In this document: one piece after another, positions 7,747 to 9,526 of the stretch
Layout: every line of letters starts with the position of its first letter
Numbering within the stretch: position 1 is the first letter of the stretch
NCBI GenBank assembly: GCA_964035545.1
Contig: OZ037767.1
Coordinates: 27,234,628 to 27,298,627, forward strand
Source of the DNA: Bugula neritina
Lineage: Eukaryota; Animalia; Bryozoa
Direction: 5' to 3'
DNA: 64,000 bases
Made by a program: the position numbers and the translations under genes
The notes under the pieces: generated by a model
What the model was told of the DNA's origin: nothing
Databases searched by the model: none
Seen by the model: only the letters and a program-made list of their open reading frames with translations

Positions 7747-9526
7747 TTAGAACTGAATCATCTGTCCCTTCTTCTTCTTGTCTCCTCCCAACTCGAAGTG
7801 TTTACATCTCTTAATGGCCAACTGCTTTTTATACTTGCACGCTGAGCATTCCATCTTTAGCACAATCTTTTTTGTTGTTTTAGCCTAAAAACAAAACCAA
7901 ACTTTTAGATACGAGAGAGAACTGTGATGACCCAACATTCTCCAGTATTCATTACAATGTAGTTTATTAAAGCCATAAACTAAACTGACTTGATTAGGTT
8001 GATTTCATAACAATGAAATTTATAAAGAGCTACAAAACTACTAATAGCATTTCATTTGCACTAAAAATTTAGCCTTACGCACGTTTCATCCCATGATGTA
8101 ATTCAAATATGCCATGAGATGGAAAAAATTAGTTTTAAGTTGAGCTGTGACAATGATTAATTTCTAACAAATCAAGGATTTGAATTGCTCAAATAAAACT
8201 TCAATGTGCTCCTTTTTCTCCAAATACATCATAAGTATGTCACACATAATAGCAAGCCAATGACATCTGAATATCATTGGCCAAATGCTTCAATGTATTA
8301 AGTATGTCTGAATACACTTCTAGTGTATTAATGGGTAGTAAACTTACTTTTTTGTGAAACACCTGTTTGGTTTGACCACCATAACCTTGCTGCTTTCGGT
8401 CATAACGACGCTTTCCTGCAAAAATTAAATAAATATTAATCTCAAATATGGAATACGATGCTTTGTGAAAAATAGTTTACTGCATGTAACTAAAATTAAA
8501 CAGATATCTATATTCTTACCTTGGGCATAAACGGAATCTTTTCCTTTTTTATACTGTGTGACTTTGTGAGCAGTATGCTTCTTGCAATTTCTCCCTTTGC
8601 AGAAGGTTCGCCTAGTCTTGGGTACGTTAACCTAAAGTTTACAAAATAAGCGATTTAGAACTATTACTTGATTCTGTAACTTACAAGAGTTAAGGAACAC
8701 ATAGTTATACAGCCACCAACTTACAGGCTTGAAATCTTTCTGATATACAAGAGTTATTAGATTATACGAAATAAATTAAAATAAAGCCAATTGAAGAAAC
8801 TATTATTACCAATATTAAGAATAGCATGCGATTATCCTACATTTATAGCAGCCATCAGGTAGCTGCAGACCTCAAGTAGTTAGTTATCAATAACATTAGC
8901 ATAGCCTAAATAATTTCAATATCAATATGAATACGTAATTTGCAAAATGAATATATATTTATTTACTATAAATATAGTTTTTATATTTAATTTTATATAA
9001 TGGAAATCCTCTGCCTCTAGAGTTGAGTTAAGCAAAATCCTAGAATTCCAAGAGCATATTTTTGAATTTGTGACTGAGAACTTGCTGAAGCATCTCTAAA
9101 ATTATTACGGTTTTCAAAAGTGGACAACTCTTGAAATTACACACGCACCATTTTATATTAAAACTTGCAGTTTTTACCACACAGCGCCTGTTAAAATTAA
9201 TCACGACACACCAAAACCGTGCAATAAAACTTTTGAAAAGTCAAGGAGTGTCAAGTTTCGCATTACAATTACTGGAGACAAATACAATTATATAAAGTTG
9301 CTGTAAAATTCAAGTAAATATCGCTTAGAGACGACCTAACAATACAATGTTAGCTCTAAACTCTCATTATTTTAACGACAAACAAGATTATCTAGTTAAA
9401 CATATGCATAACGACAGAGAATATATCATACATTCAGCAAACCATACAATAATTTAGAAAAAAGGTTGCGGTTTCACTGTTTGGTATGGATAAAGTTGAC
9501 TTATAATTTTTTTAGAAACTCACCAT
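7747..9526 (-). CDS. RPL36A: 60S ribosomal protein eL42 (L36a/L44), 4 exons, 106 aa, carrying Gln at position 56
   Basis: Exons 9526-9524 (ATG only), 8631-8520, 8415-8348, 7884-7747 splice to [112 protein letters not shown] follows at ~7712-7717 (minus strand). The gene is absent from the supplied ORF track. Confidence 0.97.

What the first reader, a model, noticed from the sequence alone, without database searches (positions are those of the whole stretch)
8348..8415. Animal ribosomal protein eL42 carries the P56Q cycloheximide-resistance substitution
Seen: exon 3 of an intact, normally spliced RPL36A reads ...[17 protein letters not shown], with codon CAG at 8365-8363. Counting from Met1 this is residue 56, the same numbering as yeast because the protein shares the fungal-type CxxxxC/CxxC spacing. 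The usual KQS is also changed to KQQ (residue 48). Established: this position is Pro in human (GGQTKPIF) and S. cerevisiae (GGQTKPVF) and lines the 60S E-site pocket. Gln56 is the known determinant of natural cycloheximide resistance in yeasts such as Candida maltosa and Kluyveromyces and is used as a selectable marker. Inference: this animal may have a ribosome resistant to E-site inhibitors (glutarimides, or pederin/mycalamide/psymberin- or lissoclimide-type marine toxins), possibly as self-protection against a symbiont-made or dietary toxin. The TOP-like start, introns and polyA signal argue for a functional gene, not a pseudogene.
Basis: partly seen in the sequence, partly recalled or inferred. 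Interest (0 to 1): 0.92.

Follow-up and report, generated by a model that had tools for sequence, protein, structure and literature searches.

The report
Bryozoan ribosomal protein eL42 carries Gln56
The only eL42 (RPL36A) gene of the moss animal Bugula neritina, like those of two other cheilostome bryozoans, naturally carries the single amino-acid change (Pro56 to Gln) that makes yeast, worm and hamster-cell ribosomes resistant to cycloheximide, so this group of animals is probably insensitive to that drug class; resistance itself is untested and no link to a toxin was found.

Summary
A four-exon eL42 gene lies on the minus strand (ATG 9526-9524, stop 7749-7747). Residue 56 is Gln, codon CAG at 8365-8363.

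- **Copy number:** it is the only eL42 locus in the 216 Mb genome, which matches the Darwin Tree of Life Bugula neritina assembly. No Pro56 paralogue exists.
- **Not an assembly error:** an independent B. neritina assembly and Watersipora subatra have CAG at the orthologous, syntenic locus. The EST-labelled Flustra foliacea protein also has Gln56.
- **Rarity:** of 357 eL42 sequences with the motif, 336 have Pro and 14 have Gln. The 14 are three bryozoans, one unidentified marine eukaryote and ten fungal or fungal-like sequences.

Published work in C. albicans (structure), C. elegans, human L36a in CHO cells and a choanoflagellate shows that this change impairs cycloheximide action. Insensitivity to glutarimides is therefore a well-founded but untested prediction.

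The trait spans three families, bryostatins do not target ribosomes, and the assembly holds no bacterial-type polyketide synthase.

The second protein wall of the same pocket, uL15, reads GGLLHRR instead of GGxHHHR. First-stage note s1-476017, on another piece of this genome, had already flagged that. Octopus shares Leu39, so only Arg41 is so far specific to Bugula.

No reads could be laid.

The parts
9542..9547 (-). CCTCTT pyrimidine run upstream of the ATG: a possible TOP-type transcription start. The true start was not mapped.
   Evidence: Read directly from the sequence. No transcript data could be obtained.
9524..9526 (-). Exon 1 coding part: the ATG only (Met1), followed by a GT donor at 9523-9522.
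   Evidence: Watersipora's 106-residue product begins MVNVPK although its exon 2 starts at Val2, so it has the same one-codon first exon. The 2020 Bugula annotation missed this tiny exon and gives a wrong N-terminus (P0324).
8520..8631 (-). Exon 2: residues 2-38 plus the first base of Gly39. Holds the first zinc-binding cysteine pair, Cys12 and Cys17.
   Evidence: Translation. Pfam PF00935 positions 1-22 match at 23.6 bits. The acceptor AG and donor GT were read.
8348..8415 (-). Exon 3: residues 39-61, the eL42 loop that lines the E-site pocket of the 60S subunit (Tyr43, Lys55, Gln56, Phe58).
   Evidence: Translation. PF00935 positions 20-43 match at 29.3 bits. The peptide is identical in the second Bugula assembly and in Watersipora.
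8363..8365 (-). Codon 56, CAG = Gln, where nearly all eukaryotes have Pro.
   Evidence: CAG is also found in GCA_010799875.2 (L004) and in Watersipora GCA_963576615.1 (L005).
8387..8389 (-). Codon 48, CAA = Gln, where yeast and human have Ser. Common in other animals and not diagnostic.
   Evidence: Gln48 occurs with Pro56 in P0053, P0028 and P0045.
7747..7884 (-). Exon 4: residues 62-106 and the TAA stop. Holds the second cysteine pair, Cys74 and Cys77.
   Evidence: Translation. PF00935 positions 44-76 match at 43.2 bits.
7712..7717 (-). AATAAA polyadenylation signal, 30 nt after the stop codon.
   Evidence: Read from the sequence.

Best explanation
This is the functional, single-copy gene for large-subunit ribosomal protein eL42 (RPL36A) of the cheilostome bryozoan Bugula neritina. 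Residue 56, in the loop that forms one protein wall of the E-site pocket of the 60S subunit, is Gln instead of the almost universal Pro.

The change is fixed and old. It is shared, with the same CAG codon where DNA was available, by at least three cheilostome families: Bugulidae, Flustridae and Watersiporidae.

By analogy with solved Gln56 ribosomes, the Gln side chain should narrow the pocket and clash with the glutarimide ring. Cycloheximide-type inhibitors would then bind poorly, and translation in these animals would be largely insensitive to them.

- **Shown here:** the sequence, the copy number, orthology, selective constraint and taxonomic spread.
- **Inferred:** drug insensitivity.
- **Undetermined:** why the change was fixed. 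Near-neutral drift or co-evolution with the altered uL15 loop is at least as likely as selection by a toxin.
For: **Gene model and Gln56:**

**Single copy:** only the three exons of this gene match PF00935 in the whole genome, even at E<=10.

**Organism:**
- The protein matches the public 'RpL36A [Bugula neritina]' except for one residue and a mispredicted N-terminus.

**Independent confirmation:**
- Watersipora, Bugula and Flustra proteins fall in one 90%-identity cluster, and all have Gln56 and Gln48.
- CAG is present in both independent genome loci, with the same intron positions and the same PRA1 neighbour.

**Constraint:** 42 synonymous against 9 non-synonymous codon differences from Watersipora over 105 codons.

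**Rarity:** residue counts are Pro 336, Gln 14, Leu 3, Val 3, Ala 1 among 357 eL42 sequences. Octopus has Pro56.

**Mechanism from the literature:**
- C. albicans Gln56 clashes with the glutarimide group, and its lysate is resistant (PMC9132455).
- C. elegans P55Q is viable, looks wild type and develops normally at 1 mg/ml, the highest cycloheximide dose tested (PMC12132315).
- Human L36a P54Q confers resistance on CHO cells (PMC10172305).
- The pocket is formed by eL42 and uL15 (PMC11482609).
Against: - No functional test exists for any bryozoan. I found no paper that uses cycloheximide on bryozoans.
- The size of the effect depends on context. In Salpingoeca rosetta, P56Q helped only below 10 ng/ml.
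- The bryozoan uL15 wall also differs (Leu39, Arg41). That could either add to or offset the effect of Gln56.
Expression rests on the Flustra record, which is labelled 'putative' and which I know from memory, not from a tool result, to be EST-derived, and on the gene being the only copy.
- Only one stretch of the rRNA wall of the pocket was checked.
Confidence: 0.72

Rival explanations
1. Adaptive target-site insensitivity. Gln56, perhaps together with the uL15 change, was fixed because cheilostomes are chronically exposed to an E-site inhibitor made by associated microbes, prey or themselves. Candidates are a glutarimide, a succinimide or a tedanolide-like polyketide.
For: - The change has been held for a long time in three families, under purifying selection.
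- Pro56 is otherwise strongly conserved.
- Glutarimide polyketides are made by marine bacteria associated with invertebrates, for example the sesbanimides of Stappia and Labrenzia (PMC12710063).
- The cheilostome Myriapora truncata yields myriaporones, which resemble the E-site binder tedanolide (PMC6722838 and PMC7689648).
- Both protein walls of the pocket differ from the usual animal form.
Against: - No such toxin is known from Bugula, Flustra or Watersipora (and my knowledge).
- The review assigns myriaporones to eEF2 phosphorylation, not to ribosome binding.
- Bryostatins target protein kinase C (my knowledge).
- The assembly has no bacterial-type ketosynthase. It was decontaminated, so this is weak evidence.
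- P55Q worms look normal, so selection is not needed to explain fixation.
- uL15 Leu39 is also present in octopus, which keeps Pro56.
Confidence: 0.18
2. The change has no effect on drug sensitivity in its bryozoan setting. Because of the altered uL15 loop or rRNA differences, Gln56 does not make the ribosome drug-insensitive. It is simply a tolerated or compensatory substitution that affects E-site tRNA handling.
For: - Position 56 is also Ala in the brachiopod Novocrania and Val in venerid clams, so lophotrochozoans tolerate variation here.
- uL15 Leu39 and Arg41 change the neighbouring wall.
- The effect of P56Q was small in a choanoflagellate.
Against: Pro-to-Gln at this site gave resistance in every system where it was tested, across fungi, a nematode, mammalian cells and a choanoflagellate. 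The structural reason, a clash with the glutarimide group, is local to residue 56.
Confidence: 0.09
3. Artefact: an assembly or base-calling error, or a pseudogene copy, with the real functional gene encoding Pro56.
For: None found.
Against: - The same CAG is seen in a second B. neritina assembly that carries its own synonymous differences, and in Watersipora.
- The Flustra protein has Gln56.
- The reading frame, splice sites and polyadenylation signal are intact.
- There is no other eL42 locus.
Confidence: 0.01

Closest known systems
Natural Gln56 eL42 (L41/L42) of cycloheximide-resistant yeasts: Candida albicans (PDB 7PZY series), C. tropicalis, Kluyveromyces lactis, Ogataea
   Same: Gln sits at the homologous residue 56 in the same GGQTK-Q-(V/I)FHKK loop. 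Protein length (106 residues) and cysteine spacing are the same. In C. albicans this residue explains the resistance structurally.
   Different: - The bryozoan case is an animal lineage with a single intron-containing gene.
- No resistance phenotype has been measured.
- The neighbouring uL15 loop is also altered in Bugula (Leu39, Arg41). In C. albicans, P56Q was reported as the only functional-site difference.
Engineered animal and holozoan alleles: C. elegans rpl-36A(P55Q), human L36a P54Q in CHO cells, Salpingoeca rosetta rpl36a P56Q
   Same: The same substitution in an animal-type eL42. It is viable and confers cycloheximide resistance.
   Different: Those alleles were made in the laboratory as selection markers. 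Here the allele is natural, fixed and shared by several families. The engineered effect ranges from full resistance at the highest dose tested (worm) to modest (choanoflagellate).
Octopus bimaculoides ribosome (PDB 9EHO), another lophotrochozoan with an unusual E site
   Same: It is the closest solved eL42 (192 bits to the Watersipora protein). Its uL15 also has Leu39 in place of the usual His (GGLLHHR). The octopus paper reports a natural break in helix 88 of the E site.
   Different: Octopus keeps Pro56 in eL42 and His41 in uL15. No rRNA break was looked for in Bugula.
Yeast cyh2-type resistance through uL15 (Rpl28)
   Same: It involves the same pocket and the same uL15 loop. Mutations in both eL42 and uL15 are reported to confer cycloheximide resistance (PMC12012676).
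   Different: The classical yeast change is at Gln38 (my knowledge). Bugula differs at positions 39 and 41, whose effect on drug binding is unknown.

Membership tests
eL42 / Ribosomal_L44 (Pfam PF00935) | Sequence match to the family profile | tested here: met
   The exons match consecutive profile positions 1-22 (23.6 bits), 20-43 (29.3 bits) and 44-76 (43.2 bits). The curated cut-off is 25 bits. Public bryozoan orthologues carry PF00935.
eL42 / Ribosomal_L44 (Pfam PF00935) | Four zinc-binding cysteines and the conserved E-site loop residues (Tyr43, Lys55, Phe58) | tested here: met
   Cys12 and Cys17 lie in exon 2 and Cys74 and Cys77 in exon 4. Tyr43, Lys55 and Phe58 lie in exon 3.
eL42 / Ribosomal_L44 (Pfam PF00935) | An orthologous, functional locus rather than a retrocopy or pseudogene | tested here: met
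   It is the only locus in the genome. Three introns sit at the same positions as in Watersipora. The PRA1 neighbour is the same. Codon differences are 42 synonymous against 9 non-synonymous.
Natural Gln56-type cycloheximide-resistance alleles of eL42 | Gln at the residue homologous to yeast Pro56 | tested here: met
   CAG at 8365-8363. It aligns without gaps to Gln56 of C. albicans eL42 and to Pro56 of octopus and other eL42 sequences.
Natural Gln56-type cycloheximide-resistance alleles of eL42 | The Gln56 protein is the eL42 actually present in ribosomes: no sensitive Pro56 copy, and the gene is expressed | tested here: inconclusive
   There is no Pro56 copy, so the ribosome must use this gene. 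Direct expression data for Bugula could not be obtained. The Flustra orthologue is a transcript-derived record by my knowledge of its source, not by a tool result.
Natural Gln56-type cycloheximide-resistance alleles of eL42 | A measured resistance of translation or growth to cycloheximide | not testable with these tools
   No bryozoan data appeared in the literature searches. A lysate or larval assay is needed.
Target-site self-resistance to a holobiont-made toxin | An E-site inhibitor, or its biosynthetic genes, is present in the animal or its symbionts | tested here: inconclusive
   A ketosynthase (PF00109) search of the assembly found only exon-sized hits on chromosomes 2 and 5 and no bacterial-type PKS. 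The published assembly had contaminants removed, so absence means little.
Target-site self-resistance to a holobiont-made toxin | The substitution occurs only in lineages that have the toxin | tested here: not met
   Gln56 is shared by Bugula, Flustra and Watersipora. No common ribosome-targeting metabolite of these three is known (and my knowledge).

The most novel reading that the evidence does not exclude
Cheilostome bryozoans have an evolved, remodelled E-site pocket in the 60S subunit: eL42 Gln56 together with uL15 Leu39 and Arg41. On this reading it is target-site insensitivity to imide-type or tedanolide-type translation inhibitors made in their own holobionts or fouling communities. 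That would be a ribosomal counterpart of toxin-insensitive sodium pumps and sodium channels, and it would point to undiscovered E-site inhibitors in bryozoan-associated microbes.
Probability: 0.15. Interest if true: 0.85.

Novelty: new member of a known kind. Interest (0 to 1): 0.6.

Why it matters
**Practical consequences.** If bryozoan ribosomes are insensitive, cycloheximide would fail as a translation block, a ribosome-profiling arrest agent or a chase reagent in bryozoans. Inhibitors that bind elsewhere would be needed. Cycloheximide could not serve as a selectable marker either.

**Evolution.** As far as my searches show, this is the first animal lineage found to carry the classic resistance residue naturally. 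A 2025 worm study lists Pro at this position in mouse, human, fly, worm and baker's yeast, with K. lactis as the only exception. Together with the octopus helix 88 break and the Leu39 of uL15 shared with octopus, it suggests that the E site is less frozen in lophotrochozoans than textbooks imply.

**Ecology.** It gives a cheap, testable handle on whether marine invertebrates face natural E-site inhibitors.

Tried and rejected
- **Reads.** Independent assemblies served instead.
- **Pro56 paralogue or retrocopy.** None found in the whole genome at E<=10.
- **Joined protein.** Exons were searched separately or placed as separate rows in alignment A1. Full-length public orthologues returned by the tools (P0196, P0324, P0325) were used for the wider searches.
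- **Representative library.** At 50% identity it gave mostly mispredicted fragments and was of little use beyond supplying sequence ids.
- **Other bryozoan classes, phoronids and entoprocts.** None appeared among the named hits, so the node where Gln56 arose could not be placed.
- **Holobiont PKS screen.** Only animal-type hits.
- **Papers on cycloheximide or other translation inhibitors in bryozoans.** None relevant.
- **Intronic snoRNAs or other RNAs in the gene.** Only a chance-level mir-210 match (19.8 bits against a gathering score of 50, E=0.26).
- **rRNA wall of the pocket.** It is intact in every rDNA copy found. The helix 88 nucleotides were not mapped because no reference numbering was to hand.
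- **P0394.** This animal-like Gln56 sequence comes from a dinoflagellate-bloom sample and could not be assigned to an organism.

Full report
**What is in the window**

An eL42 (RPL36A) gene with four coding exons lies on the minus strand.
- Exon 1 contributes only the ATG (9526-9524) and is followed by a GT donor.
- Exon 2 (8631-8520) translates as [37 protein letters not shown].
- Exon 3 (8415-8348) translates as (G)[22 protein letters not shown].
- Exon 4 (7884-7747) translates as [45 protein letters not shown], followed by a stop.

All introns have GT...AG ends. AATAAA lies 30 nt after the stop, at 7717-7712. A CCTCTT run precedes the ATG, at 9547-9542.

Counting across the exon translations makes residue 56 Gln (CAG 8365-8363) and residue 48 Gln. 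Exons were used one at a time by reference, or as separate rows of alignment A1.

**Whose genome it is**

- The genome has 216,009,554 bases in 321 sequences, and the window lies at 27.23-27.30 Mb of sequence C3.
- The Darwin Tree of Life assembly of Bugula neritina (tzBugNeri2.1) has 216.00 Mb in 320 scaffolds plus a mitochondrion. Its chromosome 3 is 32.42 Mb (PMC11480708).
- The public protein 'RpL36A [Bugula neritina]' (KAF6029318.1, from the independent 2020 draft assembly) matches the window's exons except for Ala76Thr and a mispredicted N-terminus.
These checks bear that out.

**Is Gln56 real, and is it the only copy?**

A six-frame search of the whole genome with PF00935 at E<=10 returns only the three larger exons of this gene. 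There is therefore no Pro56 paralogue and no retrocopy.

Independent sequences do the same job.
- The 2020 B. neritina assembly (locus L004) and the Watersipora subatra genome (locus L005) both read CAG at codon 56.
- Both loci have the same intron positions and the same downstream PRA1-family gene.
- The Flustra foliacea RPL36A record also has Gln56 and Gln48.
- Against Watersipora, the 105 compared codons show 42 synonymous and 9 non-synonymous differences. That means deep divergence with strong purifying selection, and exon 3 has no amino-acid change at all.

Gln56 is thus a fixed trait of at least three cheilostome families. From the fossil record (my knowledge, not tested here) that implies an age of roughly 100 million years or more.

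**How unusual it is**

Across four searches I collected 417 proteins, of which 357 carry the GGQTK motif. The next residue is Pro in 336, Gln in 14, Leu in 3, Val in 3 and Ala in 1.

The 14 Gln cases are:
- the three bryozoans;
- one unassigned animal-like sequence from a dinoflagellate-bloom sample (P0394);
- ten fungal or fungal-like sequences, among them Candida tropicalis, Pneumocystis, Ogataea, Ophiostoma and Trichomonascus.

Named molluscs, cnidarians, flatworms, annelids, arthropods, nematodes, vertebrates, a hemichordate and a sponge all have Pro. So does Octopus bimaculoides in PDB 9EHO. The exceptions among lophotrochozoans are Ala56 in the brachiopod Novocrania and Val56 in the venerid clams Mercenaria and Ruditapes.

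- The CKGxxCKKH cysteine spacing is the ordinary invertebrate form, not a fungal peculiarity.
- Gln48 occurs with Pro56 in other animals.

**What Gln56 should do**

Cycloheximide binds a small pocket at the E site of the 60S subunit, formed by rRNA, eL42 and uL15 (PMC11482609; PMC10094517).
- In C. albicans, cryo-EM shows that the Gln56 side chain shrinks the pocket and clashes with the glutarimide ring. Cell-free translation there is resistant. Phyllanthoside, which lacks a glutarimide, still binds (PMC9132455).
- In C. elegans, an edited P55Q strain looks wild type and develops normally at 1 mg/ml cycloheximide, the highest dose tested (PMC12132315).
- Human L36a P54Q confers resistance on CHO cells (PMC10172305).
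- In Salpingoeca rosetta, P56Q helps only at low doses.
- Lissoclimides place their succinimide where the glutarimide sits and hydrogen-bond to the backbone of Pro56 and Phe58 (PMC12012676). An effect on them is plausible but untested.
- For pederin-family compounds and tedanolides I found no evidence either way.

The prediction that bryozoan ribosomes are insensitive to glutarimides is therefore well grounded but remains an inference. I put it at about 0.7.

**The second wall of the pocket**

Yeast resistance also maps to uL15, so I looked up the single uL15 (RPL27A) locus, at G000:C2:17.30 Mb.
- Its first coding exon reads ...[20 protein letters not shown], whereas vertebrate structures read GG(L/M)-X-HHR with a modified His39. 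Bugula therefore has His39Leu and His41Arg.
- His39 is the hydroxylated residue next to the CCA end of the E-site tRNA and next to the cycloheximide site. His39Ala impairs human ribosomes (PMC10094517).
- A first-stage note on another piece of this genome (s1-476017) had flagged the same motif. I reached it independently and verified it.
- The octopus uL15 in PDB 9EHO reads GGLLHHR (organism identified). Leu39 is therefore not specific to bryozoans and may be widespread in lophotrochozoans. Arg41 is so far seen only in Bugula.
- I could not reach uL15 of the other bryozoans.
- The helix 11 stretch around yeast G92/C93 is intact in all rDNA copies found. The helix 88 nucleotides were not mapped.

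**Why it was fixed**

Evidence against this:
- The trait is shared by three families rather than being tied to the Bugula symbiont.
- Bryostatins act on protein kinase C (my knowledge).
- The assembly holds only exon-sized, animal-type ketosynthase matches, although it had been decontaminated.
- The worm allele has no visible cost.
- Neighbouring lineages tolerate Ala or Val at the site.

Points that keep the idea alive:
- Marine invertebrate-associated bacteria make glutarimide polyketides.
- The cheilostome Myriapora truncata yields myriaporones, which resemble the E-site binder tedanolide. A review, however, attributes their action to eEF2 phosphorylation.

I rate adaptive toxin insensitivity at about 0.15-0.2.

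**Verdict**

The drug-insensitivity inference is reasonable but untested, and the toxin story is speculative. It is a new, natural animal member of a known kind of allele. It matters in practice for anyone using cycloheximide on bryozoans, and it offers a cheap test of whether the E site is under ecological selection in marine invertebrates.

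Noticed in passing
G000:C2:17301733-17304861 (locus L007, nt 428-565, plus strand): The single uL15 (RPL27A) gene reads [12 protein letters not shown] instead of GG-x-HHHR, that is His39Leu and His41Arg. 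His39 is the hydroxylated residue beside the E-site tRNA end and the cycloheximide pocket. Octopus uL15 (PDB 9EHO) shares Leu39 but keeps His41. First-stage note s1-476017 also flagged the motif.
   Followed up: partly
Proteins P0302, P0284, P0287 and P0231: eL42 residue 56 is Ala in the brachiopod Novocrania anomala and Val in the venerid clams Mercenaria and Ruditapes, and also in one unnamed marine transcript. Lophotrochozoans vary at this otherwise conserved drug-contact site, and these species may also have altered cycloheximide sensitivity.
   Followed up: no
Locus L006 (Logan SRR8881735 contig, nt 363-686): An intronless, animal-like eL42 with Gln56, Gln48 and an odd C-terminus (…KKAKANSVQMW). 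It comes from a dinoflagellate-bloom sample and its organism is unknown. It may be a second animal-type lineage with Gln56.
   Followed up: partly
window 7152-7154 (ATG) and downstream, minus strand: A PRA1-family gene starts about 600 bp downstream of eL42 on the same strand. The same neighbour follows eL42 in the second Bugula assembly and in Watersipora, so the gene pair is conserved across cheilostomes.
   Followed up: partly
window 13326-14381: A perfect (GT)528 microsatellite, 1,056 bp long with no interruption. It explains the strong GC skew of this stretch and the long open frames in three reading frames.
   Followed up: yes
window 54274-58689, minus strand: A 1,471-residue open frame of a gypsy-type retroelement in which the integrase (residues 599-770) lies before the reverse transcriptase and RNase H (residues 1095-1446). 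There is also a weak SCAN-like capsid match. The order is the reverse of typical Ty3/gypsy elements. Described only.
   Followed up: partly
window 61524-62381, plus strand: A long open exon matching the Major Facilitator Superfamily (MFS_1, E=1.4e-18). It probably belongs to a transporter gene.
   Followed up: no
G000:C2:9749552-9812733 and C5:3555937-3556167: Four tandem genes with ketosynthase-domain exons lie within about 63 kb on chromosome 2, and a fifth lies on chromosome 5. They could be fatty-acid-synthase-like or animal polyketide synthase genes. No bacterial-type PKS is present in the assembly.
   Followed up: no
G000:C6:7117623-7269973 and C135: An rDNA array with units about 11-13 kb apart. 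It forms two blocks of opposite orientation that meet near 7.18 Mb on chromosome 6. Further copies lie on the unplaced scaffold C135.
   Followed up: no
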